DNA of 64,000 nt from Octopus sinensis (lineage: Eukaryota), in assembly GCF_006345805.1 (NCBI RefSeq), contig NC_042997.1, positions 95,542,001 through 95,606,000 on the forward strand, given 5' to 3'. Shown piece by piece: positions 1 through 64,000 of the stretch (position 1 is the stretch's first letter; every line of letters starts with the position of its first letter). Position numbers and translations under genes: made by a program. The notes under the pieces were generated by a model that was not told the origin of the DNA, ran no database searches, and was given only the letters and a program-made list of their open reading frames with translations.

Positions 1-51
1 GCGTATTTATCGTTATGGTAAAATCTGGCGTGTGATTGAGTGGATTTCATC

Positions 52-145
52 CAGATAGTTTTGGCTGACGAAGCTACAAGTGGATTTTTTTGTAAGTAAA
101 ATACATTTAATTCATTAATAGCGAAACAAGTCCCAAAATAATCTG
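52..145 (+). ncRNA. Type I HHR, copy 1 (variant: extra A after core, loop III AA instead of AATT)
   Basis: CAGAT-A-GTTTTGG CTGACGA(A) GCTA..TAGC GAAAC AA GTC CCAAAAT-A-ATCTG; predicted cleavage after 132. The indels may be assembly errors. Confidence 0.7.
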
Positions 146-583
146 TATTTTTGTTGTTTTTTATTTGCCCTGTCCGTGATGAGCTAACAATCGTACTGAC
201 TTTCATGGGAAACATGTATTTTTGTGGTTGAAACCTTTTGGATTAAATGGTGCTAGAGTGGGCCATATAGTGACCACTCTCTTATATTTATTGTAAACAA
301 TATTGTAATATATTATAAAATATTATAATAATCCAGGTTTCTCGGAGCACTAGGCCACTTGGTGTTGAATAGAATATACTATTAAATTAGTATCTAATTC
401 TCTCACCCTTATTAATTAATATATAATTATGCTGCATTTATTTCTAAATGCTGTATTTGTTTTCCGTGAGAGTTGGCGCTGTTAGGGGGGCATTTGAATC
501 ATAACGTCGGAGTTGTAATGCAATGACCCACACGCGTATTTATCGTTTGGTAAAATCTGGCGTGTGATTGAGTGGATTTCATC

Positions 584-675
584 CAGATAGTTTTGGCTGA
601 CGAGCTACAAGTGGATTTTTTTGTAGTAAAATACATTTATTCATTAATAGCGAAACAATTGTCCAAAATAATCTG
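584..675 (+). ncRNA. Type I HHR, copy 2 (one C missing from stem I)
   Basis: Core at 597; GAAAC AATT GTC; predicted cleavage after 663. Confidence 0.75.
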
Positions 676-1119
676 TTTTTGTTTTGTTTTTTATTTGCCC
701 TGTCCGTGTGAGCTAACAATCGTACTGACTTTCATGGGAAACATGTATTGTGGTGGTTGTGAAACCTTTTGGATTAACTGGTGCTAGAGTGAGCCATATA
801 GTGACCACTCTCTTATATTTATTTTGTAAAACTATTGTAATATATTATAAAATATTATAATAATCCAGGTTTCTCGGAGAGTACTAGGCCACTTGGTGTT
901 GAATAGATATACGATTTAATTAGTATCTAATTCTCTCACCCTATATTAATTACTATAATTATGGCTGCATTTATTTCTAAATGCTGTATTTGTTTTCCGG
1001 TGAGAGTTTGGCGCGCTGTTAGTTGGGGCATTTGAATCATAACGTCGGATGTAATCAATTGAACCACACGCATATTTATCGTTATGGTAAAATCTGGCGT
1101 GTGATTGAGGGATTTCATC

Positions 1120-1215
1120 CAGATAGTTTTGGCTGACGAGCTACAAGTGGTATTTTTTGTTGTAAGTAAAATTACATTAATTCATTTAGCGAAACAATTG
1201 TCCCAAAATAATCTG
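1120..1215 (+). ncRNA. Type I HHR, copy 3
   Basis: Core at 1133; intact catalytic nucleotides, indels only in distal stem II; predicted cleavage after 1202. Confidence 0.85.
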
Positions 1216-1654
1216 GTATTTGTTGTTTTTTATTTGCCTGTCCGTGGGAGCTAACAATCGTACTGACTTTCATGGGAAAACTGTATTTTTGTGGACTGAA
1301 ACCTTTTGGATTAACTGGTGCTAGAGTGAGCCATATAGTGACCACTCTCTTATATTTATTTGGTAAAATATTGTAATATATTATAAATTATATAATAATC
1401 CAGGTTTCTCGGGCAGCACTAGGCCACTTGGTGTTGAATAGATTTACTATTAAATTAGTATCTAATTCTCTCACCCTTATTAATTAATTATAATTATGCT
1501 GCATTTATGTCTAAATGCTGTATTTGTTTTTTCGTGGAGAGTTTGGCGCGCTGTTAGTTGGGGCATTTGAATCATAACGTCGGATGTAATCAATTGAACC
1601 ACACGCGTATTTATCGTTACGTAAAATCTGGCGTGTGATTGAGTGGATTTCATC

Positions 1655-1750
1655 CAGATAGTTTTGGCTGACGAGCTACAAGTGGATTTTTTTGTAAGTA
1701 AAATTACATTTAATTCATTAATAGCGAAACAATTGTCCCAAAATAATCTG
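1655..1750 (+). ncRNA. Type I HHR, copy 4 (consensus)
   Basis: CAGATAGTTTTGG CTGACGA GCTA [43 nt] TAGC GAAAC AATT GTC CCAAAATAATCTG; predicted cleavage after 1737. Confidence 0.9.
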
Positions 1751-2189
1751 TATTTTTGTTGTTTTTTATTTGCCCTGTCCGTGTGAGCTAACAATCGTAC
1801 TGACTTTCATGGGAAACATGTATTTTTGTGGTTGAAACCTTTTGGATTAACTGGTGCTAGAGTGGGCCATATAGTGACCACTCTCTTATATTTATTTTGT
1901 AAAAATATTGTAATATATTATAAAATATTATAATAATCCAGGTTTCTCGGAGCACTAGGCCACTTGGTGTTGAATAGATATACTATTAAATTAGTATCTA
2001 ATTCTCTCACCCTTATTAATTAATTATAATTATGCTGCATTTATTTCTAAATGCTGTATTTGTTTTCCGTGAGAGTTTGGCGCGCTGTTAGTTGGGGCAT
2101 TTGAATCATAACGTCGGATGTAATCAATTGAACCACACGCGTATTTATCGTTATGGTAAAATCTGGCGTGTGATTGAGTGGATTTCATC

Positions 2190-2285
2190 CAGATAGTTTT
2201 GGCTGACGAGCTACAAGTGGATTTTTTTGTAAGTAAAATTACATTTAATTCATTAATAGCGAAACAATTGTCCCAAAATAATCTG
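2190..2285 (+). ncRNA. Type I HHR, copy 5 (consensus)
   Basis: Core at 2203; predicted cleavage after 2272. Confidence 0.9.
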
Positions 2286-2722
2286 TATTTTTGTTGTTTT
2301 TTATTTGCCCTGTCCGTGTGAGCTAACAATCGTACTGACTTTCATGGGAAACATGTATTTTTGTGGTTGAAAGCTTTTGGATTAACTGGTGCTAGAGTGA
2401 GCCATATAGTGACCACTCTCTTATTATTTTGTTGTAAAAATATTGTAATATATTATAAAATATTATAATAATCCAGGTTTCTCGGAGCACTAGGCCACTT
2501 GGTGTTGAATAGATATACTATTAAATTAGTATCTAATTCTCTCACCCTTATTAATTAATTATAATTATGCTGCATTTATTTCTAAATGCTGTATTGTTTT
2601 CCGTGAGAGTTTGGCGCGCTGTTAGTTGGGGCATTTGAATCATAACGTCGGATGTAATCAATTGAACCACACGCGTATTATCGTTATGGTAAAATCTGGC
2701 GTGTGATTGAGTGGATTTCATC

Positions 2723-2818
2723 CAGATAGTTTTGGCTGACGAGCTACAAGTGGATTTTTTTGTAAGTAAAATTACATTTAATTCATTAATAGCGAAACAA
2801 TTGTCCCAAAATAATCTG
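2723..2818 (+). ncRNA. Type I HHR, copy 6 (consensus)
   Basis: Core at 2736; predicted cleavage after 2805. Confidence 0.9.
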
Positions 2819-3257
2819 TATTTTTGTTGTTTTTTATTTGCCCTGTCCGTGTGAGCTAACAATCGTACTGACTTTCATGGGAAACATGTATTTTTGTGGT
2901 TGAAAGCTTTTGGATTAACTGGTGCTAGAGTGAGCCATATAGTGACCACTCTCTTATATTTATTTTGTAAAAATATTGTAATATATTATAAAATATTATA
3001 ATAATCCAGGTTTCTCGGAGCACTAGGCCACTTGGTGTTGAATAGATATACTATTAAATTAGTATCTAATTCTCTCACCCTTATTAATTAATTATAATTA
3101 TGCTGCATTTATTTCTAAATGCTGATTTGTTTTCCGTGAGAGTTTGCGCGCGCTGTTAGTTGGGGCATTTGAATCATAACGTCGGATGTAATCAATTGAA
3201 CCACACGCGTATTTATCGTTATGGTAAAATCTGGCGTGTGATTGAGTGGATTTCATC

Positions 3258-3352
3258 CAGATAGTTTTGGCTGACGAGCTACAGTGGATTTTTTTGTAAG
3301 TAAAATTACATTTAATTCATTAATAGCGAAACAATTGTCCCAAAATAATCTG
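3258..3352 (+). ncRNA. Type I HHR, copy 7
   Basis: Core at 3271; predicted cleavage after 3339. Confidence 0.88.
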
Positions 3353-3787
3353 TATTTTTGTTTTTTTTTATTTGCCCTGTCCGTGTGAGCTAACAATCGT
3401 ACTGACTTTCATGGGAAACATGTATTTTTGTGGTTGAAAGTTTTGGATTAACTGGTGCTAGAGTGAGCCATATAGTGACCACTCTCTTATATTTATTTTG
3501 TAAAAATATTGTAATATATTATAAAATATTATAATAATCCAGGTTTCTCGAGCACTAGGCCACTTGGGTTGAATAGATATACTATTAAATTAGTATCTAA
3601 TTCTCTCACCCTTATTAATTAATTATAATTATGCTGCATTTATTTCTAAATGCTGTATTTGTTTTCCGTGAGAGTTTGCGCGCTGCTTAGTTGGGGCATT
3701 TGAATCATAACGTCGGATGTAATCAATTGAACCACACGCGTATTATCGTTATGGTAAAATCTGGCGTGTGATTGAGTGGATTTCATC

Positions 3788-3882
3788 CAGATAGTTTGGC
3801 TGACGAGCTACAAGTGGATTTTTTTGTAAGTAAAATTACATTTAATTCATTAATAGCGAAACAATTGTCCCAAAATAATCTG
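3788..3882 (+). ncRNA. Type I HHR, copy 8 (one T missing from stem I)
   Basis: Core at 3800; predicted cleavage after 3869. Confidence 0.85.
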
Positions 3883-4321
3883 TATTTTTGTTGTTTTTAT
3901 TTGCCCTGTCCGTGTGAGCTAACAATCGTACTGACTTTCATGGGAAACATGTATATTTTGTGGTTGAAACCTTTTGGATTAACTTTAATGTGGCTCTAGA
4001 TATGAGCCCTCTCTATATCTCTTATTTATTTTGTAAAATATGTAATATATTATAAAATATTATAATAATCCAGGTTTCTCGGAGCACTAGGCCACTTGGT
4101 GTTGAATAGATATACTATTAAATTAGTATCTAATTCTCTCACCCTTATTAATTAATTATAATTATGCTGCATTTATTTCTAAATGCTGTATTTGTTTTCC
4201 GTGAGAGTTTGGCGCGCTGTTAGTTGGGGCATTTGAATCATAACGTCGGATGTAATCAATTGAACCACACGCGTATTTATCGTTATGGTAAAATCTGGCG
4301 TGTGATTGAGTGGATTTCATC

Positions 4322-4417
4322 CAGATAGTTTTGGCTGACGAGCTACAAGTGGATTTTTTTGTAAGTAAAATTACATTTAATTCATTAATAGCGAAACAAC
4401 TGTCCCAAAATAATCTG
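4322..4417 (+). ncRNA. Type I HHR, copy 9 (loop III AACT, palindrome broken)
   Basis: Core at 4335; GAAAC AACT GTC; predicted cleavage after 4404. Confidence 0.8.
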
Positions 4418-4854
4418 TATTTTTGTTGTTTTTTATTTGCCCTGTCCGTGTGAGCTAACAATCGTACTGACTTTCATGGGAAACATGTATTTTGTGGTTG
4501 AAACCTTTTGGATTAACTGGTGCTAGAGTGAGCCATATAGTGACCACTCTCTTATATTTATTTTGTAAAAATATTGTAATATATTATAAAATATTATAAT
4601 AATCCAGGTTTCTCGGAGCACTAGGCCACTTGTGTGAATAGATATACTATTTAATTAGTATCTAATTCTCTCACCCTTATAATTAATTATAATTATGCTG
4701 CATTTATTTCTAAATGCTGTGTATTTGTTTTCTGTGAGAGTTTGGCGCGCTGTTAGTTGGGGCATTTGAATCATAACGTCGGATGTAATCAATTGAACCA
4801 CACGCGTATTTATCGTTATGGTAAAATCTGGCGTGTGATTGAGTGGATTTCATC

Positions 4855-4949
4855 CAGATAGTTTTGGCTGACGAGCTACAAGTGGATTTTTTTGTAAGTA
4901 AAATTACATTAATTCATTAATAGCGAAACAATTGTCCCAAAATAATCTG
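4855..4949 (+). ncRNA. Type I HHR, copy 10
   Basis: Core at 4868; predicted cleavage after 4936. Confidence 0.88.
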
Positions 4950-5382
4950 TATTTTTGTTGTTTTTTATTTGCCCTGTCCGTGTGAGCTAACAATCGTACT
5001 GACTTCATGGGAAACATGTATTTTTGTGGTTGAAACCTTTTGGATTAACTGGTGCTAGAGTGAGCCATATAGTGACCACCTCTTATATTTATTTTGTAAA
5101 AATATTGTATATATTATAAAATATTATAATAATCCAGGTTTTCGGAGCACTAGGCCACTTGGTGTTGAATAGATATACTATTAAATTAGTATCTAATTCT
5201 CTCACCCTTATTAATTAATTATAATTATGCTGCATTTATTCTAAATGCTGTATTGTTTTCCGTGAGAGTTTGGCGCGCTGTTAGTTGGGGCATTTGAATC
5301 ATAACGTCGGATGTAATCAATTGAACCACACGCGTATTTATCGTTATGGTAAAATCTGGCGTGTGATTGAGTGGATTTCATC

Positions 5383-5477
5383 CAGATAGTTTTGGCTGAC
5401 GAGCTACAAGTGGATTTTTTGTAAGTAAAATTACATTTAATTCATTAATAGCGAAACAATTGTTCCAAAATAATCTG
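5383..5477 (+). ncRNA. Type I HHR, copy 11 (GUU cleavage triplet)
   Basis: Core at 5396; GAAAC AATT GTT CCAAAA; predicted cleavage after 5464. Confidence 0.8.
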
Positions 5478-5912
5478 TATTTTTGTTGTTTTTTATTTGC
5501 CCTGTCCGTGTGAGCTAACAATCGTACTGACTTTCATGGGAACATGTATTTTGTGGTTGAAAGCTTTTGGATTAACTGGTGCTAGAGTGAGCCATATAGT
5601 GACCACTCTCTTTATTTATTTTGTAAAAATATTGTAATATATTATAAAATATTATAATAATCCAGGTTTCTCGGAGCACTAGGCCACTTGGTGTTGAATA
5701 GATATACTATTAAATTAGTATCTAATTCTCTCACCCTTATTAATTAATTATAATTATGCTGCATTATTTCTAAATGCTGTATTTGTTTTCCGTGAGAGTT
5801 TGGCGCGCTGTTAGTTGGGGCATTTGAATCATAACGTCGGATGTAATCAATTGAACCACACGCGTATTTATCGTTATGGTAAAATCTGGCGTGTGATTGA
5901 GTGGATTTCATC

Positions 5913-6008
5913 CAGATAGTTTTGGCTGACGAGCTACAAGTGGATTTTTTTGTAAGTAAAATTACATTTAATTCATTAATAGCGAAACAATTGTCCCAAA
6001 ATAATCTG
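5913..6008 (+). ncRNA. Type I HHR, copy 12 (consensus)
   Basis: Core at 5926; predicted cleavage after 5995. Confidence 0.9.
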
Positions 6009-6444
6009 TTATTTTTGTTGTTTTTTATTTGCCCTGTCCGTGTGAGCTAACAATCGTACTGACTTTCATGGGAAACATGTATTGTTTGTGGTGAAAGCTT
6101 TTGGATTAACTGGTGCTAGAGTGAGCCATTAGTGACCACTCTCTTATATTTATTTTGTAAAAATATTGTAATATATTAAATATTATAATAATCCAGGTTT
6201 CTCGGAGCACTAGGCCACTTGGTGTTGAATAGATATACTATTAAATTAGTATCTAATTCTCTCACCCTTATTAATTAATTATAATTATGCTGCATTTATT
6301 TCTAAATGCTGTATTTGTTTTCCGTGAGAGTTTGGCGCGCTGTTAGTTGGGGCATTTGAATCATAACGTCGGATGTAATCAATTGAACCACACGCGTATT
6401 TATCGTTATGGTAAAATCTGGCGTGTGATTGAGTGGATTTCATC

Positions 6445-6539
6445 CAGATAGTTTTGGCTGACGAGCTACAAGTGGATTTTTTTGTAAGTAAAATTACATT
6501 AATTCATTAATAGCGAAACAATTGTCCCAAAATAATCTG
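6445..6539 (+). ncRNA. Type I HHR, copy 13
   Basis: Core at 6458; predicted cleavage after 6526. Confidence 0.88.
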
Positions 6540-6810
6540 TTTTTTGTGGTTTTTATTTGCCCTGTCCGTGTGAGCTAACAATCGTACTGACTTTCATGGG
6601 AAACATGTATTTTTTGGGTTGAAACCTTTTGGATTAACTGGTGCTAGAGTGAGCCATATAGTGACCACTCTCTTATATTTATTTTGTAAAAATATTGTAA
6701 TATATTATAAAATATTATTATAATCCAGGTTTCTCGGAGCACTAGGCCACTTGGTGTGAATAGATATACTATTAAATTAGTATCTAATTCTCTCACCCTT
6801 ATTAATTAAT

Positions 6811-6820
6811 TATATATATA

Positions 6821-6863
<43 letters not shown>

Positions 6864-6880
6864 TATATATATATATATAT

Positions 6881-6932
<52 letters not shown>
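6811..6932. repeat. (TA)n microsatellite abutting the end of the array
   Basis: About 120 bp of nearly pure TA dinucleotide. Confidence 0.95.
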
Positions 6933-6936
<4 letters not shown>

Positions 6937-8810
6937 CCTTTTTATTTCCTTTCTTTCAAAGAATACCCCTAGAATCAAGAGAGCTAGCTCCAAGCATTTG
7001 TACAAAAATATTATTTGATAATTATGTCCTTCTGTACATAAATTATTTAGTTTTGTTTTCGTGCAATAAGCAAATCAATGCAAAATTTGAATCATTTAGT
7101 GTTGAAAAATGTGTTTCCGGTGTTTATGGAAATGGTGGCATGATGAATACTATATCGTACATAGGTATAAACATTTTATTTAAATATGTTTTCCTGTAGG
7201 AAAGTTTAGAATTTAACATAGTCTTATAAGCAACATATACGCCTTCCAACTATCTAAACTTGATTACCTTACTGCATATGTATGTGTAAAGAGTAGCAAC
7301 ATCTATAGAAAAAAAGTGACTGATGGCCCAACATGAATGTCTCCCTTGTCGAAGGTACGGATATTTTGTTCTAAGGGACAAAGTGCCGGATTAAGTCGCT
7401 AGTGTTTGGCATCAGTGTCACTGCAAGCGTTGCTTTCAGGATACAGTGAACAAGACCACATATCTCAAATCGAAAAGTATCTCATACGTCTTTCTAACAT
7501 TTTCGCTAGTTTATTGGCCAGGATTAGTTCTATTTTATAAACTCCGATAGGTGAAGAGCAAATTTGACTTGAGCAGGATGTGAGTGCAGAGCGACAATAC
7601 AAGTACGTGAAGTCATTCCACCAAAGGCCCAAACAAGAAATCAGCGCCTTTAGATATATTAAAGAATATCTTACCTGAAGATGAAAGCTGTCTCATATAC
7701 ACAATTATTTATACTTAATTCTTACGGATATACGATGTAACATTCAAGCATTGCATATTTAACTTGCCTTGTATATGTCTTTCTGTTACTTTAATTTGAA
7801 TATGTCCTTTAATTTAAATATATTTTCTCTTTCATATTCAACCTTTGACATTATCATTCTTTAAATTTGAAACAAATGATTTGCACTAAATACTGCTAAT
7901 ATGTCTTCTGAATAAGACTATAATGTTTTCCGCGCCTCTTCGTCGATAATATGCTTCCTCGTGAAAGATAATTCAAAAACTTTTTCCGTTCTGAAAGGTT
8001 TTACAGATTCTTAGAGTCTGCATAGTAGAATCCGGTTGTTCTTAGATGGAATATATCATAACATGATTCGTAGTGAATAGATTTCAATTTCGACGCAAAT
8101 CTCTCAACTTGCTTGATTAAGCTATTACATGATTCCTGAACATAAAAATCCATTACGTTTTCTTTCAGTTTGTTTACCTATCCTGACCTTAGTACGATTT
8201 TGCTAACTTTGGTGTGTAGATATCCTGAAAGAATAACGTATTGGACATTAAGGTTGCACATGCATGCTTCTAATTTCCGTTGTGAATACAGTAGGAGATG
8301 TTAATTTCTATTTATGTGAAAGGGAATTGTATGTATTCCTTCCAAATTCTTTGCATAAATCCCGCAAGAATTTACACTACACAAAAACCTATAATTCTGA
8401 CTCTTTGGAGCAAAACCAAAAGTTATTTACTTCGGCCATAATTCCATTAGATTGAACTTTGCATTGAACAGTCATGGCTTTGAACAATCATGCGTTTCTA
8501 TTTATTTTATTCTATTTTATTTTTCTGAGTCACAAACTCATGCTTTAATCGGAAATCATATTTCTGTTAATGAGGGTTTATTTATACATAGAGTTTCAAT
8601 GAGAATTTGAAACATCAAATATAACTTATTGAATTTTACATATCAAATCTAATAGAAAATTGGAAAGATATCATTCTGCAAATGATAGAAAAGTGTGTCT
8701 AGAAATTAAAGAAAGTGAAATAGAATTATTTAATTTTCTGTCTATATAGAGTATTCCCCAAAGCATAATATACATCTACACATGCTTGTGCACACACACA
8801 CACACGCGCG

Positions 8811-16071: not shown

Positions 16072-17382
16072 TATATATATATATATATATACATTTTCAT
16101 AAACTGACAGGGGAGATAACCGCTCCACAGTGAGCGACATCACTATACTTGTCTAGTCTCGCTTGAAAATTACAAGTTCATCAGCAGGATAGTTTGGCTA
16201 AATCCTGATTGTTAATGTATATATTTACCAAATGAATCTATGTCTGATTCAGGAAAATGCTAAAGTGAGAATTATAAAATATCGAAGGCAATTGAACTAA
16301 TTGTGACTGAGGATTCTGGGTAGCACCTATATTGTTAGAAATAGGACATTAAGTTTTCCACCTCAACAGTTAATAAATTACGAAACCAAAAGCAAAGTTA
16401 CTCAATATGAAAATCGAGGCAAACGAAAAATACACCACCGATAGTTATTGTTGACAAACAATGGCAGTAATTTTATTCAGCTGAATATACGTCATTGATT
16501 GGTTGAAATTACCGAAATGGGTCTACTTTAACGTGAAATTACTTTGTAAATATAAGTTTTTCTCAAAAAGACTAAGATTAAAACATGTTTTATATGACAC
16601 ATTCTAACAGTGTCCGAAATTTGAAAGTGCCTAGTTGCGAAAAAATATTTTAAAAATCTGTACGTCAAAAGGTAAAGATCCTAGCGAAACCAACTATTAC
16701 ACACTTTGGGCATTACGCGCCGCTGTTGCAATAGCTACAACATTAATTGTGATAATTTTTATCTTTCCATTGGACGTAAATGCAATGGGTCTGCTTTCCA
16801 CGGATCTTCACTAAATGGATATGTTTTGGAACCATATAACAATATTCTGAGTATGCATGTTTTATTAATTTCTCTTTTTTTAGTTTTTCCACACTTTCTT
16901 GAAACTTGCAGTATCATTGTCTATCCTTATATTTATATTCTCATTTAAATATGTCACTGTACAATATGAAAATATATCATCTATAACAAGCGTGTATCTA
17001 TCTACCGTGGTCACAGCGGGCGTGCATATTGGGGATGGGATAAGAGTTTTTGTTGTGCAAGTCTCTGGTGAAGATGCGTTTTCTTCTCGGGAAAACTTGT
17101 CTATCTGTGATAGTGCCGCGTCGGCAAACAGCGGAAATCGATCGGTGGATATAGATGCCTTTGTAGATTAAGATGTTATCTTAAACGAAGGACAACGGGA
17201 TGCAGGAACATTGATTTTCTGTGAGCTTTCTCGAGATTCACAAAGAAGATCCAGGCTGTAAGAAATCTGTAAGAGCAACCCGTTCACGTGTTTGATTAAT
17301 ACTTGTGCTAAAGTTCTGATAAAAGTAAAAATACGTAGAGAATAACAATCAACAGAGGTGAAAATATTATGAAAAGTTTAAG

Positions 17383-17570
17383 AAGGAGAACTGGCAAAGT
17401 CGTTAGCAAGCAGGACAAAATGTGGCTTTTCTTCTGACTTTAGATTCTGAGTTCAAATTCTGCTGTGGCTGACTTCGCCTTTCATACTTTGGCTGATAAA
17501 GTAAGCTAGTCAAGTTCAGCGGCCGATGAACTGGAGTACCATCCTACCCCCAAATTCCGGGTCACTTTCC
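17383..17570 (+). mobile_element. Degenerate tRNA-derived SINE (same family as 32560, 48691, 50705)
   Basis: ctggcaaagtcgttagc...ttctgagttcaaatt...gacttcgcctttcat matches the better copies in this window. Confidence 0.65.
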
Positions 17571-30666: not shown

Positions 30667-30982
30667 CATGAACTCTGGTAACTCGAGTCAAGAGATTTGC
30701 CGGCATACTGTATACTGACCTCCTAAAATTCAAATAGCAGTCTAATCACACCACTCCGTCTTAACAAGGAATGATAAATAACACAATATATTCTAAATAT
30801 CTTTAAAGAAAAAATGGTTTGAACATGAACTCTGGTAACTTGAGTCAAGAGATTTGTCGGCATACTGTATACTGACCTCCTAAAATTCAAATAGCAGTCT
30901 AATCACACCACTCCATCTTAACAAGGAATGATAAATAACACAATATATTCTAAATATCTTTAAAGAAAAAACGTTTGAACAT
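30667..30982. repeat. Tandem duplication, 2 x ~157 bp
   Basis: catgaactctggtaact...gtttgaacat repeats at 30667 and 30824 with very few differences. Confidence 0.92.
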
Positions 30983-32559: not shown

Positions 32560-32800
32560 AAATATGTATATATTTCTTTGTTGGACACAAGGGCTAAACA
32601 TAGAGCGTACAAACAAAGAAGGACAAAGGGTTTAAGTCGATTACATCGACCCCAGAGCGTAACAGGTACTTATTTAATCGTTCCGAAAGAATGAATGGCG
32701 AAGTCGACCTCGGCGAAGTTTGAACTCAGAACGTGGCGGCAGACGAAATATCGGTAAGCATTTCGCCTGGTGTGCTAGTGATTCTGCCAGCTCGCCGCCT
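32560..32800 (-). mobile_element. tRNA-derived SINE
   Basis: The minus strand reads aggcggcgagctggcagaatc...ttctgagttcaaacttcgccgaggtcgacttcgcc; same family as 50705. Confidence 0.85.
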
Positions 32801-32819
32801 TTCAGGATATATAATATAC

Positions 32820-45375: not shown

Positions 45376-45452
<77 letters not shown>

Positions 45453-45524
45453 AAGGGTGAAAAGGAACACACGAGTTGATATATATGAAAAAACAAGTAA
45501 AAAATAGAAAATGCTAAGTGAACA

Positions 45525-45914: not shown

Positions 45915-46150
45915 GTGGAGAAGAAGAAGAAGAAGAAGAAGAAGAAGAAGGAGAAGGAGAAGGAGAAGATGACGATGATGGTGATGGTGGTGATGATTAT
46001 GACGACGATGATGATGATAACGATGATGATGAAGAAGAAGAAGAAGAAGAAGAAGAAGGAGGAGAAGGAGAAGATGGTGGTGATGATGGTGGCGATGATG
46101 ATGATGCCGATGATGATGAAGAAGAGGAAGAAGAAGAAGAAGAAGAAAAA
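45915..46150. repeat. Compound (GAA)n/(GAT)n/(GGT)n microsatellite inside the Penelope 3' region
   Basis: Direct reading. Confidence 0.9.
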
Positions 46151-46337
46151 ACAGAGAAGGGAGAATATGAATGGGTGTAAATATAGCTATGAAGGGGCTG
46201 ATTAGTAATGGATTCTATGGAGTGTAGTATTTGTGTGTATATATATTTTTTTCTTTTATTCTAAAGTTGAGGTATATTAATTGTTTGTCGTAGACCCGTT
46301 AAGAAGTGGCTTGTATTTTGTAATAAAGAGATTTTCT

Positions 46338-47237
46338 TTACTTATTCGTTGTCTCGAGGTTGTATCGTCCTAAATTGGTAGAGGGGGAAAATTCTGAAGT
46401 TGGTGTTTTTTTGTTGGCGCAAGTATCTATGTGTTGGCTAAAAGCTATTTTTCTGTTTTGGGGAATTTTTATCTGGGATCTGTGCAGGGCCATTCGTTTA
46501 CGCAAACCATTTTTTGTTTGGCCTATGTACTGCTCTTGACACCCGGAGCAGGTTAGTGAGTATATTAGGTTCTCCGAAGCACATGTGAAGTTGCTTTTCA
46601 CTGTAAAACGTTGTCCCTGTTTGAAGGAGAACTCAGAACCCTCGATTAGATAGTCGCATATCCCGCAATTGGGTCTTCCACATTTTTTTACTGTCGGCTT
46701 CTGTGTTGAAGAGTGAATTCGGGCTTGTGTAAGGAGACTTTTCATGGATCTAGGCTGTCTTTTGCTTTTTATGATCGTGTGTGTTTGGAGGATTGTGTTC
46801 ATTCTGTGGTCTTTTTTTAGGAGGGGTATGTTGTGGAGGATGGTGTCGAAGGCTTCGTTATTGAGAGGGTTGTGTGTGGAGATGTATGGTAAGGCTTTTG
46901 GTTGTAAGTTTTTCTTTGATTTGGGATGTCTCAGTTCCTTGATGTTAAGTTGAAGGGCACGTTGAATGCATTTGTCAATAAGTGAAGGTGGATAGTTCCT
47001 GGTGATTAGGGTATCTTTTAGTTCTTGTAGTCGTGTGTCTCTGGTGTTTGCGTTAGAGACTATAGTGCATATCCTTTTTGCTAGATTGAAGGGGATATTC
47101 ACCCTGGTGTGTCTGGGGTGGCATGAATTGAATGGAAGATATTGCTTAGAGTCTGTAGGCTTATAGTATATGTCTGTTTCTATTATATTATTAGCTTTCT
47201 TAATGAGGATATCGAGGAACTGACCGCCACTGACCAT
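46338..47237 (-). CDS. Penelope pol fragment: RT C-terminus/thumb and GIY-YIG endonuclease (truncated, probably non-functional)
   Basis: FLDILI..TDIYYKPTDSKQYLPFNSCHP (PLE RT end); CGRPNCGICD..NLIYSLTCSGCQEQYIGQT..LRKRMALH (GIY-YIG with Cys motifs). The true RT frame starts at the inversion junction near 47220. Confidence 0.85.
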   Translation of the reverse strand: MVSGGQFLDILIKKANNIIETDIYYKPTDSKQYLPFNSCHPRHTRVNIPFNLAKRICTIVSNANTRDTRLQELKDTLITRNYPPSLIDKCIQRALQLNIKELRHPKSKKNLQPKALPYISTHNPLNNEAFDTILHNIPLLKKDHRMNTILQTHTIIKSKRQPRSMKSLLTQARIHSSTQKPTVKKCGRPNCGICDYLIEGSEFSFKQGQRFTVKSNFTCASENLIYSLTCSGCQEQYIGQTKNGLRKRMALHRSQIKIPQNRKIAFSQHIDTCANKKTPTSEFSPSTNLGRYNLETTNK

Positions 47238-47700: not shown

Positions 47701-48690
47701 ATTAATTTACTCTGCTATGTATTGAGTACCTTATTTACTGTGGTTAACCCCGACTCAACCCGGGACATATATATATATATATATGTATATGTGTATGTGT
47801 GTGTGTGTATGTATGTATGTATGTATGTATGTATGTATGAATACACATATATATATATGGTGAATGTATAGATATATATTTGTGTACATTCCTGTATGTG
47901 TATGTATGTGTATAACACCGTAGATTGGTACGGGTGTTCAACACGTATCTCGCCAATACCAATGTCAACTAAATTGATTTCCATCATCAAAATCCCGAAA
48001 TATATTTCAGATTTTAATATAAAATTATACATTATATGTCATTTCCTCTCTGAACTTCGTCTTCACCTTATCAATATACGAGCCAACCTTCAACTCTACT
48101 AATCATAAACCAAACCCATTTCACTCAGTAACTGTTCACCTCCTGTCGTATCAGGATGAGGTCTTTGATTGTTCAGTAAATTTTCAGATAACTAAGCAGC
48201 GAATTGTTATCATACGCAAAGCTTATTACTGTATACAGCAATACTTTCCAGTCACCTCTGACCGACACATTTTCGTCTGTGCAATTTCTCGTACTATACG
48301 TGCTTCATTTCAAACCTTGCCCCCTTGCCAATCTACTTTACCAATTTTATTGAATTATTCAGCCAATTCCGCCTAAAGATTCTCTTTGTGTTTATCTGAA
48401 CTTCGGCCAAATTTGTATTAAATCATACAGTAGCATTAGCGGTATAGTAACGTTCATTAGAATCGCCATCAGTGTATTTCGTCGTTTATTTGATACAATC
48501 AACAGTTAATTTTAAAGTTTACATATATTCTAGACTTAGTTATACCGTAAATGAAAAACAAAATATCTATGACTGGTTTGAACGTGATCATATGTCAGAT
48601 CATTAACTTATCACCCGGGGTTAAAATCATCGACATATATATTCACCTCATTTTTAATATTCATTATTGCAATATTTAGTGCCATTCATA

Positions 48691-49160
48691 AGGCTGTGAC
48701 CTGTGCAGAATCGATAGCACGCCGGGTAAAGTTTAGTCTCATTTCGTTCGTCTATACGTTCTGAGTTCCAGTTTCATCCAGTTCGACTTTGGTTTTTACC
48801 CTTTATGGGCCGATAAAATATGTACTAGTTAATTTTTTTTTTAGACATTCTCCAGTCACGGCGACTCCTAAGAGCTGGTTTCCCGGGATTCATGGCGTAT
48901 AAATTCTCCACTTGGACAGGACAACAGTCCGTCGCAGGATTACTTTTTTTTTTGTTAGGTGAGTAGACTGGAACAACGTAAAATATTTTGCTTAAGATCA
49001 CAACGCGTCGTCCGGTCCAGGAATGGAAGCTACAATCTTAGGATGATGAGTCCAATAACCACTAAGCCAAACACCTTTTGAGTACTGGGGTCGTTTAAAA
49101 CGACTTATTCCCTTTTCAACGAAATTGTTGGCCTTGTGCCAAAATTGGAAACCAATATTT
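48691..49160 (+). mobile_element. tRNA-derived SINE split by a nested SINE
   Basis: 5' half 48691-48830 (gcagaatcgatagcacgccggg..ttctgagttcc); 3' half resumes at ~49078 (tgagtactggggtcg). Confidence 0.7.
48843..49075 (-). mobile_element. Nested tRNA-derived SINE of a different family
   Basis: Minus-strand head GGTGTTTGGCTTAGTGG (A box) with a degenerate B box; T-run (minus-strand A tail) at 48833-48842. Confidence 0.65.
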
Positions 49161-50704: not shown

Positions 50705-50915
50705 AGACGGCGAACTAGCAGAATCGTTAGCATGATGGACGAAATGCTTAGCGGTATTTCGCCCGTCGCTACGTTCTGAGTTCATATTCAACCGAGGTCG
50801 ACTTTGCCTTTCATCTTTCGGGGTCGATAAAATGAGCATCAGTGAAACACTGGGCCGATATAATCGACTAACCCGCCTCCGCCAAAGCTTCAGGCCTTGT
50901 GACTATAATAGAAAT
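50705..50915 (+). mobile_element. tRNA-derived SINE
   Basis: gacggcgaactagcagaatcgttagc..ttctgagttcatattcaaccgaggtcgactttgcctttcat; same family as 32560. Confidence 0.85.
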
Positions 50916-57058: not shown

Positions 57059-58035
57059 TAGTTTTATTTTTATAGCGTGCTTTCACTTCACTACCGAGCG
57101 CAGCGCTGTTTGCCTTAGGTATATGTGCTGTGATTTGTTGTGATGCTCTGATGGTTCTTGTGTTCTGCGTAGGATGTGTGCAGTGCCTAGTAGTGCAATT
57201 TTCTGTATGTTATATGTGTTTGTAATTCCTGGTGTTTTTGTTATGTATTTGTCTGAATATTTTTTATCATGCCTAATGCACCTACTATGATAGGAATCGT
57301 TTCTGTTTTTAGATTACACATTCTGGTTACCTCTATTTCCAGGTCTTTGTATTTTGAAAGTTTCTCCATTTCTTTTAGAGACACGTTGTCATCTGCCGGT
57401 ATTGATAATTGTCCATCTCCACATATTCTGCAGTTACTTGTTATATTTCTTTTCATTACATGTTTTTGGTAATTTCTGGTGGGGAGGCTTTGGTCTTGTG
57501 CTGCAATTAAAAATCCCTCTGTCTCTGCTTTGAGTCCTGAGCTTCTCAACCATTGCTGGGATCTTTCTTTGTCTATTTCTTTTGCGTTTAGTTTAGTCCA
57601 GTATTTACCATGAAGGGGCTTTTCTTGCCATCGTTTTATCATGGTTCGTTGCTGTTCTATTTTTAGTTTGGATTTCATTTGTTTTATAGCTTTTGTTGTT
57701 TCTTCTTCTTCTTCTTCTTCTTCTTCTTCTTCTTCTTCTTCTTCTTCTTCTTCTTCTTCTTCTTCTTCTTCTTCTTCTTCTTCTTCTTCTTCTTCTTCAT
57801 CATATTTGTTAGGTGGTATGATTTCTTGTTTGTATTTGTCAGATTCCTTAAATACTGAGAAAAAGATTTTGTTTTGCTCTTGTTTTGCCGCTATTTGTAT
57901 CAGTTTCCCTTGCTTCTGAAGTAGGTATTTTTGCAGTCCTATGGTGGTTATTTTATAATAGTTTTCCAGCTTTATAAGGCCTCTACCACCCTATATACGT
58001 TGTATGTATAGCCTTTCTATGTCAAATTTTGGGTG
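57058..58035 (-). mobile_element. 5'-truncated, internally deleted R4/Dong-like LINE between two (TAA)n tracts
   Basis: ORF 57241-57678: WQEKPLHGKY..WLRSSGLKAETEGFLIAAQDQSLPTRNY..CRICG|SIPADDNV..EKLSKYKDLEIE..IPIIVGALG. (ATT)n at ~56960-57057 and ~58035-58165; (TTC)n inside at 57700-57800. Confidence 0.85.
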
Positions 58036-60982: not shown

Positions 60983-61021
<39 letters not shown>

Positions 61022-62052
61022 GTGTATATGTTCACAGGTATAGACATATATCTATGCATAGGTGGATCTGTAACAGTATTTGGAATGCGTTTACTTGTGT
61101 GTGCAGATATGCATGTCCATCATGTACATATATTCGTATGTATATATGTGCGTGCGTGTGTATGTGTGTTTGTGTGTATGAGTTTGAGTGTGAATAAGTG
61201 TGTGTCTATTGTACTTGTGTTGGACAGAAAGAGACGAAAAATTGATGACACTTTTATGGCTTCTGCTGCTTTGAAGTTCGTCGCCATTTATCTCTCGTAA
61301 CTGATACAATATCTGCTTGGTTTGATGACCTTTAATGTAAACTCGAGGCTATAGCATGTCTGTGATTCTTGTATGTTCTCAGTGCAAATATCAGCTATAG
61401 AATAATTTAGATAAGTGAATCTCAATAATATAGTCGTTTGATGTCTCTGCTTCTCACATGCATGTTCAAAACGTACCTTCCGATTTTCTTATAAATTTGA
61501 AAGTTATTTTTAAAGAGCCACTAATCTAACGTCATATTTTTAACATCTTTCCTATTTAAAGTTTTACCTGAATACGGTGAATTATATGTCATGATGTAAT
61601 CTATGAATAAATCAATAAAATTCATCTGAAACAGCTGTCATAAATTTCAATCAGCATTTGTAGTGCTATTCATATCTACGCTATACCTGGAACCAACGAT
61701 AGAGTCGAATCTACGATTTAACTTGTATTTAATACTTACATATCTACACAATCTTACCAACGCTTGACACCTTCATTGTTGTTTACCTCACGGTGAACTC
61801 TATTTTATCGGACCTATTTCTGGCACCCCAAATGTTTACGTACCTAGGTTCTACTGAATCCTTATAGGTAGTGAAAATATTTATGTGTGTATGTTTGTGT
61901 ATGTCTTTGTGTGCATGGATATATGGTGAAACATTGAAACCTGCAGTTTAAATTAATTTTCTGTATATACATTACCGAATCGCTAAATCATCCATTAATT
62001 TGGATGTCGAAAACACATGTAATGCTAGAGAAGCCAGCTGAAGAAAGCCAAG

Positions 62053-62118
62053 ATCGAGCGGGCTTAACTGATGAGGCATCAATTGCCGAAACTGACGTCA
62101 GTATTAAGAATTCTTGAT
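62053..62118 (+). ncRNA. Solitary canonical Type I hammerhead ribozyme
   Basis: ATCGAG CGGG CTTAA CTGATGA GGCA TCAAT TGCC GAA ACTG ACGT CAGT A TTAAG AATT CTTGAT. All core nucleotides are present; stem I 5+6 bp, stem II 4 bp, stem III 4 bp; predicted cleavage after A62103. Confidence 0.9.
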
Positions 62119-62311
62119 GGGCATTTTTCGGAGGATTCAGCTCCTTGTTAGTGTATATGTTTTCATTCATTTGCATTAATTACAGCATTGAACACATTAG
62201 CTTGTATTTCTAGAAATGTAGTTGTTTCTGAACACCCTAGTCATAGTTAGTGAGAGTTATATATCTCGTATTTGGTGAAACAGTGCAAACTGCTGTTTAT
62301 GTTATATATAT

Positions 62312-62381
<70 letters not shown>

Positions 62382-62491
62382 TTATTTATTTATAATAAGA
62401 GTAGATCGTATACGAGTGGGTATATATTTGTAAAAAAGAAGTTTGGAAAACGCCACTATATTAGATAAATTTTAATTTTCTTATGAATTAT

Positions 62492-62535
<44 letters not shown>

Positions 62536-62536
<1 letters not shown>

Positions 62537-62970
62537 GCGCAGGAGGACTTTGTGTAAGAAGCTTGCTTCCCAACCACATGGATCTTGGTTCAGTCCCACT
62601 CTGTGGCACCTTGGCCAAGTGTCTTTTGCTATAGCCTCTGGCCGACCACAGTTTGTCAGTCTATTTGGTAGACGGAAACTGAAAGAAGCCCCTTCGTATA
62701 TATGCAGATGTATATATATATAATATTATATATATATATATAATATATATATAATATATATATATGCTTTTTATATCTGTGTTTGTGTCCACCATCGCAT
62801 GACAACAGATGTTGGTGTGTTTACGTCCCCACAACTCAGTGGTTCGGAAAAACAGACCGATAGAAGTAGTACTGGGATTACAAAGAATAAGTCCTGGGTG
62901 GATTTGTTCGAAATAAGGCGGTGCTGTATCATAGCCGAGGTTAAATGACTGAAATAAAAAGAAACAAGAA
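62536..62970 (+). mobile_element. tRNA-derived SINE interrupted by a (TA)n tract
   Basis: Head with ..gcttcccaaccacatggatcttggttcagtccca (B-box-like GGTTCAGTCCC); the body resumes after the TA tract at ~62765. Confidence 0.65.
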
Positions 62971-62982
62971 TACATATGTGTG

Positions 62983-63017
<35 letters not shown>

Positions 63018-64000
63018 TGTGTGTGTGTGTGTGTGTGTACCAATTTTCTTTTTTTTTTCATTTCAACCGAGATATAAACAGACAAATCTCAGCTTAGCAA
63101 ATGCAGACACATATTTCACCACGGCTTTAAAATGAATCTTAAATCCAAAGACGAAAGGAAATAAACGACTCGTTACGTGCACTTTCTTAGTTCTATTAGT
63201 ACAGAATCCTGCTAAATGGCAAAAAAAAAACAAAATAAACTTATCTAGGTGAGAAACGGGTCACATTATATTTATAGCCTAACCATGCACACAGAGTGCT
63301 AATGGCCTCTCTCTTACCTCTTTATCTTTCTATCTGTCTCCTTTTTGTCCTCGTCTTCCTTGTATCAATCTAACCCTATTGTTAACTCGCAATCAACAAT
63401 ACCCCTGGATCAATGAAGGCTGTTACAGAACTCAATAGTCTCGCAATATACCTACTACCACCTTACTTACACATATTAAGGTATTGGACGCATTTATACA
63501 CATGAAGTCTCATTGTCTATGATATAGATTATCACCACATTTCCCTATGTCATAGGTGCACCATCCTACCAGATTGCAATTGAATATATCATCATAGGTG
63601 CATTTAGCAGAATGCACAAACATTCGGACTAAGTTCCAGCAGAATCTTCCCGTCAAATTTATACTTACGTTGCCTGATCAATATATATCCGGACTGTTGC
63701 TATAATAACGAAACTAAAGCTCGGAGAGAAAAGTCGCCTGTCATAGACTCCCCCTGAACACTCTTGTGCATGTCCACTAAGTTGTTTACAGCAGTGCTTG
63801 GAGGAAACGTGTGAAGCGTGTTATCACCGCATTGACCATGACAGTAAGTTGAGCAGAGAATCTGCATAAAATTTTACCAAAAGCTTAGCGATACCTGCTC
63901 AGTGGGCTACGCAAAGTTTTAAAAAAATCTCATCGTTCTCGACACAATCAAAGTGATCTTATGCAACTGAAACCTGAGTGTCTGTTTGGTCAGCCGAAAG

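What the first reader, a model, noticed from the sequence alone, without database searches (positions are those of the whole stretch)
1..6814. The 'satellite' is a hammerhead-ribozyme array: a large-monomer non-LTR retrozyme, probably in an octopus
Seen: 13 consecutive ~535-bp units. Each carries stem I CAGAU-A-GUUUUGG / CCAAAAU-A-AUCUG, core CUGACGA, stem II GCUA/UAGC, GAAA, stem III AC-AAUU-GU and a GUC cleavage triplet, all on the + strand, with no real ORF. Established: tandem non-coding repeats with one Type I HHR per unit define non-LTR retrozymes (newt/axolotl satellite 2, schistosome SM-alpha, coral and mussel retrozymes). Their multimeric transcripts self-cleave to monomers that circularise and are copied by borrowed reverse transcriptase. 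Inference: a + strand transcript would be cut into ~535-nt monomers starting CCAAAAUAAUCUG and ending GAAACAAUUGUC. That is larger than the ~170-400 nt I recall for described animal retrozymes. I know of no characterised cephalopod family, but I cannot search to confirm novelty.
Basis: partly seen in the sequence, partly recalled or inferred. Interest (0 to 1): 0.95.

Follow-up and report, generated by a model that had tools for sequence, protein, structure and literature searches.

The report
Hammerhead-ribozyme tandem repeat in a cephalopod
The first 6.8 kb of the window is a tandem array of about 535-bp non-coding units, each carrying a complete type I hammerhead self-cleaving RNA motif on the + strand; this is an ordinary animal "non-LTR retrozyme" by architecture, found here in an octopus-like genome where I could find none described.

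Summary
Window 1-6810 holds 13 hammerhead (HHR) motifs spaced 528-540 bp apart (consensus unit 535 nt, units 95-99.8% like the consensus). The array is cut by the window's left edge and ends in a (TA)n microsatellite. All motifs are on the + strand.

Eleven of 13 pass a strict type I descriptor, and the catalytic core is intact in 12 of 13. Only 3 of 20,000 shuffled units gave any hit. Rfam Hammerhead_1 aligns over its full length at 30.0 bits (gathering score 34), with a 39-nt insertion in loop 2, and only when a short stretch is searched.

The unit has 33% G+C and no ORF with homologues. Its + strand RNA folds far better than shuffles (z -6 to -7) and better than the - strand. The same window holds a truncated Penelope-like element and a second, PLE-style HHR. 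Interspersed repeats shared with Octopus vulgaris support a cephalopod host.

Best reading: a non-LTR retrozyme array. Self-cleavage, circular RNA and mobilisation are inferred, not shown.

The 535-nt size is not exceptional: a 2026 preprint reports retrozyme consensus lengths of 51-972 bp. The unusual detail is a stem-loop inserted in loop 2. This is a new member of a known kind, of moderate interest.

The parts
1..6810 (+). Tandem array of about 12.7 units (consensus 535 nt, 33% G+C), cut by the window's left edge; 13 HHR motifs
   Evidence: periods of 528-540 nt; units carry 1-20 substitutions against the consensus; G+C 0.33
2723..2818 (+). Representative type I hammerhead, identical to the consensus. 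Helix I is 13 bp with an A.A mismatch; the core is CUGACGA; helix II is GCUA/UAGC plus an extension of 8 bp and a 5-bp hairpin; then GAAA; helix III is AC[AAUU]GU; C17 is at 2805. The other 12 motifs lie at 52-145, 584-675, 1120-1215, 1655-1750, 2190-2285, 3258-3352, 3788-3882, 4322-4417, 4855-4949, 5383-5477, 5913-6008 and 6445-6539.
   Evidence: descriptor and per-unit differences; fold, z -5.1; Rfam RF00163 at 2730-2811, 30.0 bits, model 1-45/45
2805..2806 (+). Predicted self-cleavage site (GUC|CC). The equivalent sites lie just before 133, 663, 1203, 1738, 2273, 3340, 3870, 4405, 4937, 5465, 5996 and 6527.
   Evidence: Position of C17 under the hammerhead numbering applied. This is an inference; cleavage was not shown.
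2273..2805 (+). One full predicted monomer RNA (533 nt), from 5' CCAAAAUAAUCUG to GAAACAAUUGUC 3'
   Evidence: + strand MFE -152 kcal/mol, z -6.1.: - strand -105.7 kcal/mol, z -3.6; circular consensus -149.9 kcal/mol, z -6.8, 68% paired.
6811..6934 (.). (TA)n microsatellite abutting the array's 3' end. The last unit stops at consensus position ~300, inside the unit's own UUAAUUAAUUAUA stretch.
   Evidence: TRF; junction sequence
46298..47234 (-). 5'-truncated Penelope-like element (RT C-terminal part, CX4CX2C linker, GIY-YIG endonuclease). It shows that the candidate helper family is present in this genome; this copy is not itself a functional helper.
   Evidence: GIY-YIG, E 0.0016; 77 homologues carrying RVT_1/GIY-YIG/HTH_animal domains; tblastn covers only the last ~300 aa
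62064..62110 (+). Second, unrelated compact type I HHR of the PLE style (helix III is the 12-nt palindrome ACUGACGUCAGU), about 190 bp upstream of a (TA)n tract
   Evidence: descriptor; 0.01 expected by chance; sequence; only a weak RAGATH-1-hammerhead match, 15.7 bits

Best explanation
The array is a non-LTR retrozyme: a non-autonomous, non-coding retroelement organised as head-to-tail units, each with one type I hammerhead ribozyme on the + strand.

Shown by the sequence:
- The tandem organisation.
- A complete hammerhead core and three helices in type I order.
- A 2-bp helix III with a palindromic tetraloop.
- A 13-bp helix I.
- A helix II of 4 bp whose loop carries an inserted stem-loop of about 39 nt.
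- A strongly and strand-specifically self-paired unit.
- A PLE fragment and a PLE-style HHR in the same window.
- An array end inside a (TA)n tract.

Inferred from the published retrozyme model (PMC7229834, PMC7761336):
1. A multimeric + strand transcript is made.
2. Each hammerhead cuts after GUC. It may act alone, or two copies may pair through the palindrome ACAAUUGU to give an 8-bp helix III.
3. This releases ~535-nt monomers with 5'-OH and 2',3'-cyclic phosphate ends.
4. Helix I holds the two ends of a monomer together, and a host tRNA ligase (RtcB type) closes the circle.
5. A Penelope-like reverse transcriptase/endonuclease copies the circle round and round, priming at a nicked (TA)n target, which yields a multimeric insertion.
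For: Motif present and far beyond chance.

Rfam Hammerhead_1 is the top match over its full length. E is 4e-6 in a 116-nt search, which scales to about 2e-3 for the whole window.

The architecture equals the 'canonical metazoan type I HHR' of PMC4209133: helix II of 4 bp, helix III of 1-2 bp with a 2-4 nt palindromic loop, in tandem repeats. PMC7229834 describes a 2-bp stem plus tetraloop as 'similar to invertebrate HHRs'.

Retrozyme traits listed in PMC7229834 are met:
- Tandem repeats.
- G+C below 45% (0.33).
- No LTR and no coding capacity.
- A highly self-paired RNA.
- Co-existence with PLEs.

Strand asymmetry of folding (-152 against -105.7 kcal/mol; z -6.1 against -3.6) points to structure selected in the + strand RNA.

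The helix III hairpin is predicted unstable (0 kcal/mol), while the palindromic duplex is -7.8 kcal/mol.

The array ends in (TA)n. The window's PLE has the CX2-5CxxC linker that PMC8557442 links to microsatellite insertion bias.
Against: - There is no evidence of transcription, cleavage or circles.
- The Rfam score is 4 bits below the gathering score, and the match is lost in window-scale searches.
- The usual loop 1 / loop 2 tertiary contact cannot be recognised. Loop 2 is interrupted by a ~39-nt stem-loop, and loop 1 is only an A.A mismatch, so activity at physiological Mg2+ is uncertain.
- The units are nearly identical, so there is no covariation support.
- No second locus of the family could be retrieved, so mobility is not shown.
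- The left end, and therefore any target-site duplication, lies outside the window.
- The PLE in the window is truncated and shares no sequence with the unit.
Confidence: 0.7

Rival explanations
1. Retrozyme-derived but dead: a satellite that began as a hammerhead repeat (or a PLE terminal repeat). It now grows and homogenises only by unequal crossing-over at the DNA level, with a ribozyme that no longer works or is not transcribed.
For: - Units are 95-99.8% alike and contiguous, as in any satellite.
- Loop 2 is disrupted by an insertion.
- The two left-most motifs are damaged.
- No other copy lies in the remaining 57 kb.
Against: - 12 of 13 cores are intact, and 4 motifs are identical to the consensus.
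- Folding is strong and favours the + strand, which DNA-level amplification alone does not explain.
- The inserted segment itself forms a regular helix rather than random sequence.
Confidence: 0.2
2. Part of an autonomous Penelope-like element: the units are tandemly reiterated pseudo-LTRs of a PLE rather than a separate non-autonomous element.
For: - PLE pseudo-LTRs carry type I HHRs and PLEs insert in partial tandems (PMC4209133, PMC8557442).
- A 2026 preprint finds retrozymes related to PLE pseudo-LTRs.
- PLE remains are in the window.
Against: - There is no RT/EN coding sequence anywhere in 6.8 kb of array.
- The unit has no similarity to the window's PLE fragment or to three PLE loci fetched, including O. 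vulgaris.
- The HHR is of the canonical kind (a helix III hairpin is present), not the minimal PLE kind.
Confidence: 0.07
3. Chance resemblance: an ordinary AT-rich satellite whose unit happens to match the hammerhead pattern.
For:
- Rfam does not report it at its gathering score.
Against: - 3 of 20,000 shuffled units give any hit, and 1 of 20,000 gives helices as good as observed.
- The Rfam match is full length, with E 4e-6 locally.
- The motif sits in exactly the genomic setting where such ribozymes are known (PMC7229834).
Confidence: 0.03

Closest known systems
Invertebrate non-LTR retrozymes (Mytilus galloprovincialis and Acropora millepora repeats; Cervera & de la Pena 2020, PMC7229834)
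   Same: - Head-to-tail non-coding units with one + strand type I HHR each.
- Low G+C.
- A highly self-paired monomer.
- Helix III of 2 bp plus a tetraloop.
- PLEs in the same genome.
- Like the mussel HHRs, the archetypal loop 1 / loop 2 contact is not recognisable.
   Different: - The unit is 535 nt, against 220-240 nt (coral) and 350-390 nt (mussel).
- Loop 2 carries an inserted stem-loop of ~39 nt.
- Helix I is a long 13-bp duplex with only an A.A mismatch.
- There are no expression or activity data here.
Amphibian satellite 2 / axolotl retrozymes Rtz_331 and Rtz_353, and Schistosoma Sm-alpha repeats
   Same: A tandem satellite with a type I HHR. Helix III is weak and palindromic, which permits a double-hammerhead (dimeric) active form.
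   Different: The amphibian motifs keep a short hairpin loop 2 with the conserved tertiary contacts. Their units are about 330-350 bp. HHR_Amex1 has a 1-bp helix III.
Vertebrate non-LTR retrozyme families of Li, Clavereau & Pollet 2026 (bioRxiv 10.64898/2026.07.22.740005)
   Same: Their consensus lengths span 51-972 bp (Actinopterygii mean 650 bp), so 535 nt is within the range. Arrays are mostly intergenic, and the families co-occur with PLEs.
   Different: No mollusc or cephalopod was sampled in that survey. About 75% of their families have at most 7 units per array, whereas this array has at least 13.
Minimal / palindromic-helix-III HHRs of Penelope-like elements (Cervera & de la Pena 2014, PMC4209133)
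   Same: Type I topology, a palindromic helix III and an association with PLE-bearing genomes. The second HHR, at 62064-62110, is of this style.
   Different: The array's HHR has a hairpin helix III and a 4-bp helix II (PLE min-HHRs have 6-8 bp and no helix III loop). It is not flanked by an RT/EN ORF.

Membership tests
Hammerhead ribozyme, type I | Conserved core: C3 U4 G5 A6 N7 G8 A9, G12 A13 A14, the A15.1-U16.1 pair, and position 17 not G | tested here: met
   The consensus reads CUGACGA ... GAAA C..GU C. The core is intact in 12 of 13 units; one unit has C17U, which is allowed; unit 1 has an extra A beside A9.
Hammerhead ribozyme, type I | Three helices around the core in type I order (helix I open; helices II and III closed), with a G10.1-C11.1 base pair | tested here: met
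   Helix I is 13 bp with an A.A mismatch, helix II is GCUA/UAGC, and helix III is AC/GU. Eleven of 13 units pass the descriptor. Helices I and II appear in the unconstrained fold.
Hammerhead ribozyme, type I | Score at or above the gathering score of Rfam RF00163 | tested here: inconclusive
   30.0 bits against 34. The whole model (1-45 of 45) is aligned, with E 4e-6 in a 116-nt search and a 39-nt insertion in loop 2. The match is not reported in searches of 7.2 kb or 64 kb.
Hammerhead ribozyme, type I | Loop 1 / loop 2 tertiary contact needed for fast cleavage at physiological Mg2+ | tested here: inconclusive
   Loop 2 is replaced by a CA/AA internal loop that opens into a further helix of 8 bp and a 5-bp hairpin. 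Loop 1 is only a G.U pair plus an A.A mismatch, 7-8 bp from the core. No canonical contact is recognisable, as is also reported for the mussel HHRs.
Hammerhead ribozyme, type I | Site-specific self-cleavage | not testable with these tools
   This needs in vitro transcription or RNA end mapping.
Non-LTR retrozyme (PMC7229834) | Short tandem repeats, from dimers to large multimers, with one type I HHR per unit | tested here: met
   13 motifs at spacings of 528-540 bp.
Non-LTR retrozyme (PMC7229834) | Low G+C (<45-50%); no LTR, PBS or PPT; no coding capacity | tested here: met
   G+C is 0.33. The only ORFs are up to 104 aa and have no homologue. There are no terminal repeats other than the units themselves.
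Non-LTR retrozyme (PMC7229834) | Monomer RNA highly self-paired | tested here: met
   z is -6.6 (linear consensus), -6.8 (circular) and -6.1 (genomic unit); 68% of bases are paired.
Non-LTR retrozyme (PMC7229834) | Monomer size within the described range | tested here: met
   535 nt is above the 170-400 nt of PMC7229834. It is inside the 51-972 bp range of the 2026 preprint.
Non-LTR retrozyme (PMC7229834) | Co-occurrence with Penelope-like elements in the genome | tested here: met
   A truncated PLE lies at 46298-47234 and a PLE-style HHR at 62064-62110.
Non-LTR retrozyme (PMC7229834) | Expression as linear and circular monomer RNAs | not testable with these tools
   No transcriptome of the host can be reached with these tools.
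Non-LTR retrozyme (PMC7229834) | Dispersed copies at independent sites, with target-site duplications when present | not testable with these tools
   The left end lies outside the window. No other copy is in the window. No cephalopod genome collection could be searched, and pattern scans of metagenome, viral and prokaryote collections found nothing.
Penelope-like element (autonomous) | RT plus GIY-YIG ORF between HHR-bearing pseudo-LTRs | tested here: not met
   There is no such ORF in 1-6810, and the unit has no similarity to the window's PLE fragment.

The most novel reading that the evidence does not exclude
This is the first retrozyme family characterised in cephalopods. Its hammerhead is active even though a ~39-nt stem-loop is inserted in loop 2. 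Helix I and helix II would then be docked by an internal-loop-to-internal-loop contact (CA/AA with the G.U/A.A site of helix I), or by the dimeric form, rather than by the classical hairpin-loop contact. The ~535-nt RNA circles would be abundant in octopus tissues.
Probability: 0.2. Interest if true: 0.6.

Novelty: new member of a known kind. Interest (0 to 1): 0.4.

Why it matters
Hammerhead-bearing tandem repeats are the source of very abundant small circular RNAs in corals, mussels and salamanders, and their link to Penelope-like elements is under active study.

A cephalopod family would extend the known host range to a lineage noted for unusual RNA biology and repeat-rich genomes.

It would also offer a natural ribozyme variant, with loop 2 interrupted by a helix, for testing how much of the tertiary contact a hammerhead needs.

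The junction with (TA)n, beside a PLE that carries the microsatellite-associated zinc-finger linker, gives a concrete and testable hint about how such arrays are inserted.

None of this changes the concept. It is a further example with one structural peculiarity.

Tried and rejected
1. Rfam at its gathering score on the whole window, and at E<=10 on 1-7200, found no hammerhead. I first read this as evidence against the motif. The same searches also missed the compact HHR at 62064-62110, and a search of a 116-nt stretch recovered Hammerhead_1 at 30 bits. The earlier misses were therefore filter losses.

2. TRF did not report the array because its longest period is 500. I used the repeat finder and my own anchors instead.

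3. Relatives through a spurious ORF: the 103-aa - strand ORF across the HHR found no protein.

4. Exact and gapped DNA patterns of the HHR gave 0 matches in metagenome contigs (two scans), viral contigs and prokaryote genomes. None of these collections is expected to hold cephalopod DNA, so this says little.

5. An exact look-up of the window's PLE ORF, meant to name the source record, found nothing on record.

6. I looked for the 535-nt unit and for HHRs in three PLE loci, including O. vulgaris OX597819.1, and found none. No link between the unit and a PLE pseudo-LTR could be shown.

7. BLAST of the unit against the other 57 kb of the window gave only AT-rich low-complexity matches.

8. Within-array conservation as a test of selection was rejected. 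The units are too alike (1-20 substitutions), and the flank upstream of the HHR is as invariant as the core.

9. Species identification through the LINE fragment at 57241-57678 found no close named hit.

Full report
**1. What is there**

Window 1 to about 6810 is a head-to-tail repeat. Direct-repeat families have start-to-start spacings of 527-538 bp. The string CCAGATAG that opens the motif occurs 13 times at that spacing.

Cutting at the predicted cleavage site gives 12 full monomers of 528-540 nt, a partial unit at 1-132, and a last partial unit from 6527. The consensus is 535 nt. Individual units differ from it by 1-20 substitutions and 0-15 indel columns.

The window begins mid-unit, so the array is probably longer than what is seen. 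It stops at consensus position ~300, inside the unit's own UUAAUUAAUUAUA stretch, where a (TA)n tract of 124 bp begins. G+C is 0.33.

**2. The hammerhead**

In the consensus the order on the + strand is:
- CAGAUAGUUUUGG, the 5' strand of helix I
- CUGACGA, core positions C3-A9
- GCUA ... UAGC, helix II, with G10.1-C11.1 at its base
- GAA (G12-A14)
- A15.1 C15.2 [AAUU] G16.2 U16.1, helix III
- C17, followed by the predicted cleavage site
- CCAAAAUAAUCUG, the 3' strand of helix I

Every conserved position of the hammerhead is correct, and the topology is type I.

My descriptor required the core, helix I of at least 4 bp, helix II of at least 3 bp, and helix III of at least 2 bp including A15.1-U16.1. 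It finds 11 of the 13 motifs on the + strand and none on the - strand. It finds only one other hit in the whole window. Dinucleotide shuffles give 3 hits in 20,000 shuffled units, and 0.01 hits per shuffled 57 kb.

Per-unit state:
- Four motifs are identical to the consensus.
- Six carry a single difference. Four of these are single-base indels in helix II or its extension, one is a U lost from helix I, and one is a U-to-C change in loop 3.
- One has a helix II extension indel together with C17U.
- One has several indels confined to helix II and its extension.
- The two left-most are damaged. One has an extra A beside A9 and has lost 2 nt of helix III. The other has lost a C at the cleavage site.

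**3. Rfam**

Searches of the whole window at the gathering score, and of 1-7200 at E<=10, reported no hammerhead. A search of only 2715-2830 gave RF00163 Hammerhead_1 as by far the best match: 30.0 bits (gathering score 34), E 4e-6, all 45 model positions aligned, and a 39-nt insertion in loop 2.

Scaled to the 64-kb window, that E-value is about 2e-3. So the covariance model agrees with the descriptor. The score falls short because of the insertion, and the speed filters lose the match in larger searches.

**4. Architecture compared with known animal hammerheads**

PMC4209133 describes canonical metazoan type I HHRs as follows: helix I of 6 bp, helix II of 4 bp, and helix III of 1-2 bp capped by a 2-4 nt palindromic loop. 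They are often active only as dimers in tandem repeats. [quoted passage not shown]

Here helix II is 4 bp and helix III is 2 bp plus AAUU. The eight bases ACAAUUGU form a perfect palindrome. The hairpin is predicted to be unstable (0 kcal/mol), whereas the duplex between two copies is -7.8 kcal/mol. A double-hammerhead mode is therefore available.

What is not canonical is loop 2. After GCUA/UAGC comes a CA/AA internal loop, then a further 8-bp helix, then a 5-bp hairpin (z -5.1 for the 104-nt domain). In place of loop 1, helix I has only a G.U pair and an A.A mismatch, 7-8 bp from the core. Whether these dock is unknown.

**5. The rest of the unit**

The monomer RNA is strongly self-paired:

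| RNA folded | MFE (kcal/mol) | z-score |
|---|---|---|
| Linear consensus, + strand | -153.1 | -6.6 |
| Circular consensus, + strand | -149.9 | -6.8 |
| Genomic unit 2273-2805, + strand | -152 | -6.1 |
| Genomic unit 2273-2805, - strand | -105.7 | -3.6 |

In the circular consensus fold 68% of bases are paired. The asymmetry between strands, which depends on G.U pairs, fits structure selected in the + strand RNA.

In the monomer fold, helix I closes the molecule by pairing its 5' end with the segment just upstream of the core. This brings the two cleavage ends together, as circularisation requires.

The only ORFs are up to 104 aa and have no homologue.

**6. Surroundings and host**

At 46298-47234 (- strand) lies the C-terminal ~300 aa of a Penelope-like element. 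It has a GIY-YIG domain and a CX4CX2C linker, and 77 homologues carry RVT_1/GIY-YIG/HTH_animal domains. Only the last part of those proteins aligns, so the copy is 5'-truncated.

PMC8557442 relates the CX2-5CxxC linker of Neptune PLEs to insertion into microsatellites, and reports a (TA)n bias for Naiad PLEs. The array ends in (TA)n.

A second, unrelated compact HHR with a 12-nt palindromic helix III lies at 62064-62110, about 190 bp upstream of another (TA)n tract.

The best named PLE hits are from Octopus vulgaris and O. bimaculoides. A 20-kb O. vulgaris locus (L001) shares several interspersed repeats with the window at 73-96% identity. An octopod or a close relative is therefore the likely source. 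The species is not determined.

**7. Mechanism**

Shown: the items in sections 1-6.

Inferred from the published model (PMC7229834, PMC7761336):
1. The + strand is transcribed as a multimer.
2. Each hammerhead cleaves after GUC, as a monomer or a dimer.
3. A tRNA ligase circularises the ~535-nt monomer.
4. A PLE enzyme reverse-transcribes the circle round and round. Priming from a nicked (TA)n target onto the unit's UA-rich segment would explain both the tandem structure and the position of the right-hand junction.

That last step is my own inference from one junction.

**8. Comparison and novelty**

All sequence-level traits of non-LTR retrozymes are met (see the membership table). Expression, activity and dispersal could not be tested.

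The monomer is longer than the 170-400 nt of PMC7229834 but within the 51-972 bp of a 2026 preprint.

Full-text searches found no paper describing a hammerhead repeat or retrozyme in a cephalopod. The main text and the single supplementary file held for PMC7229834 do not mention one either. Dfam and Repbase could not be consulted.

I rate this a new member of a known kind. Its one unusual structural feature is the interrupted loop 2.

**9. Limits**

- There is no independent copy and hence no covariation.
- There are no RNA data.
- The left boundary is unseen.
- The ribozyme's activity with its altered loop 2 is an open question.
- A dead, DNA-amplified satellite of retrozyme origin remains a serious rival, at about 0.2.

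Noticed in passing
window 62064-62110 (+): A second, unrelated compact type I hammerhead: CUUAA-CUGAUGA-GGCA[UCAAU]UGCC-GAAAC-UGACGUCA-GUA|UUAAG. Helix III is a 12-nt palindrome, as in PLE-associated variants. It lies about 190 bp upstream of a (TA)n tract at 62303-62394. Shuffles predict 0.01 such hits per 57 kb. Rfam gives only a weak RAGATH-1-hammerhead match (15.7 bits).
   Followed up: partly
window 46298-47234 (-): A 5'-truncated Penelope-like element (RT C-terminal part, CX4CX2C linker, GIY-YIG). No hammerhead lies downstream of it. It is followed by (TCT/TCA)n at 45919-46147 and (AT)n at 45376-45453. Its DNA is about 70% identical to an O. vulgaris PLE copy.
   Followed up: partly
window 62537-62957; also 17380-17490, 32567-32802, 48672-48831, 50705-50872: SINE-like interspersed repeats that match several places in a 20-kb Octopus vulgaris locus (L001) at 73-84% identity. 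A further 75-bp stretch (62421-62495) matches at 96%. I used these only as evidence for a cephalopod host.
   Followed up: partly
window 57241-57678 (-): A 145-aa ORF that resembles the C-terminal zinc-binding region of non-LTR (LINE) reverse transcriptases; some homologues carry PF13966. It is a fragment with no close named relative.
   Followed up: partly
window 1-7200 and 61000-63500 (Rfam behaviour): Rfam's speed filters drop the Hammerhead_1 match when 7 kb or more is searched, but report it at 30 bits when about 100 nt is given. Window-scale Rfam scans can therefore miss hammerheads with long insertions.
   Followed up: yes
window 30667-30982: Two copies of a 157-bp unit in tandem (96% matches). 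They are unrelated to the 535-bp unit.
   Followed up: no
window 7000-64000: The window is very rich in di-, tri- and tetranucleotide microsatellites ((TA)n, (CA)n, (TGTA)n, (TTC)n and others), and no host exon was recognised. This looks like an intergenic, repeat-rich region.
   Followed up: no
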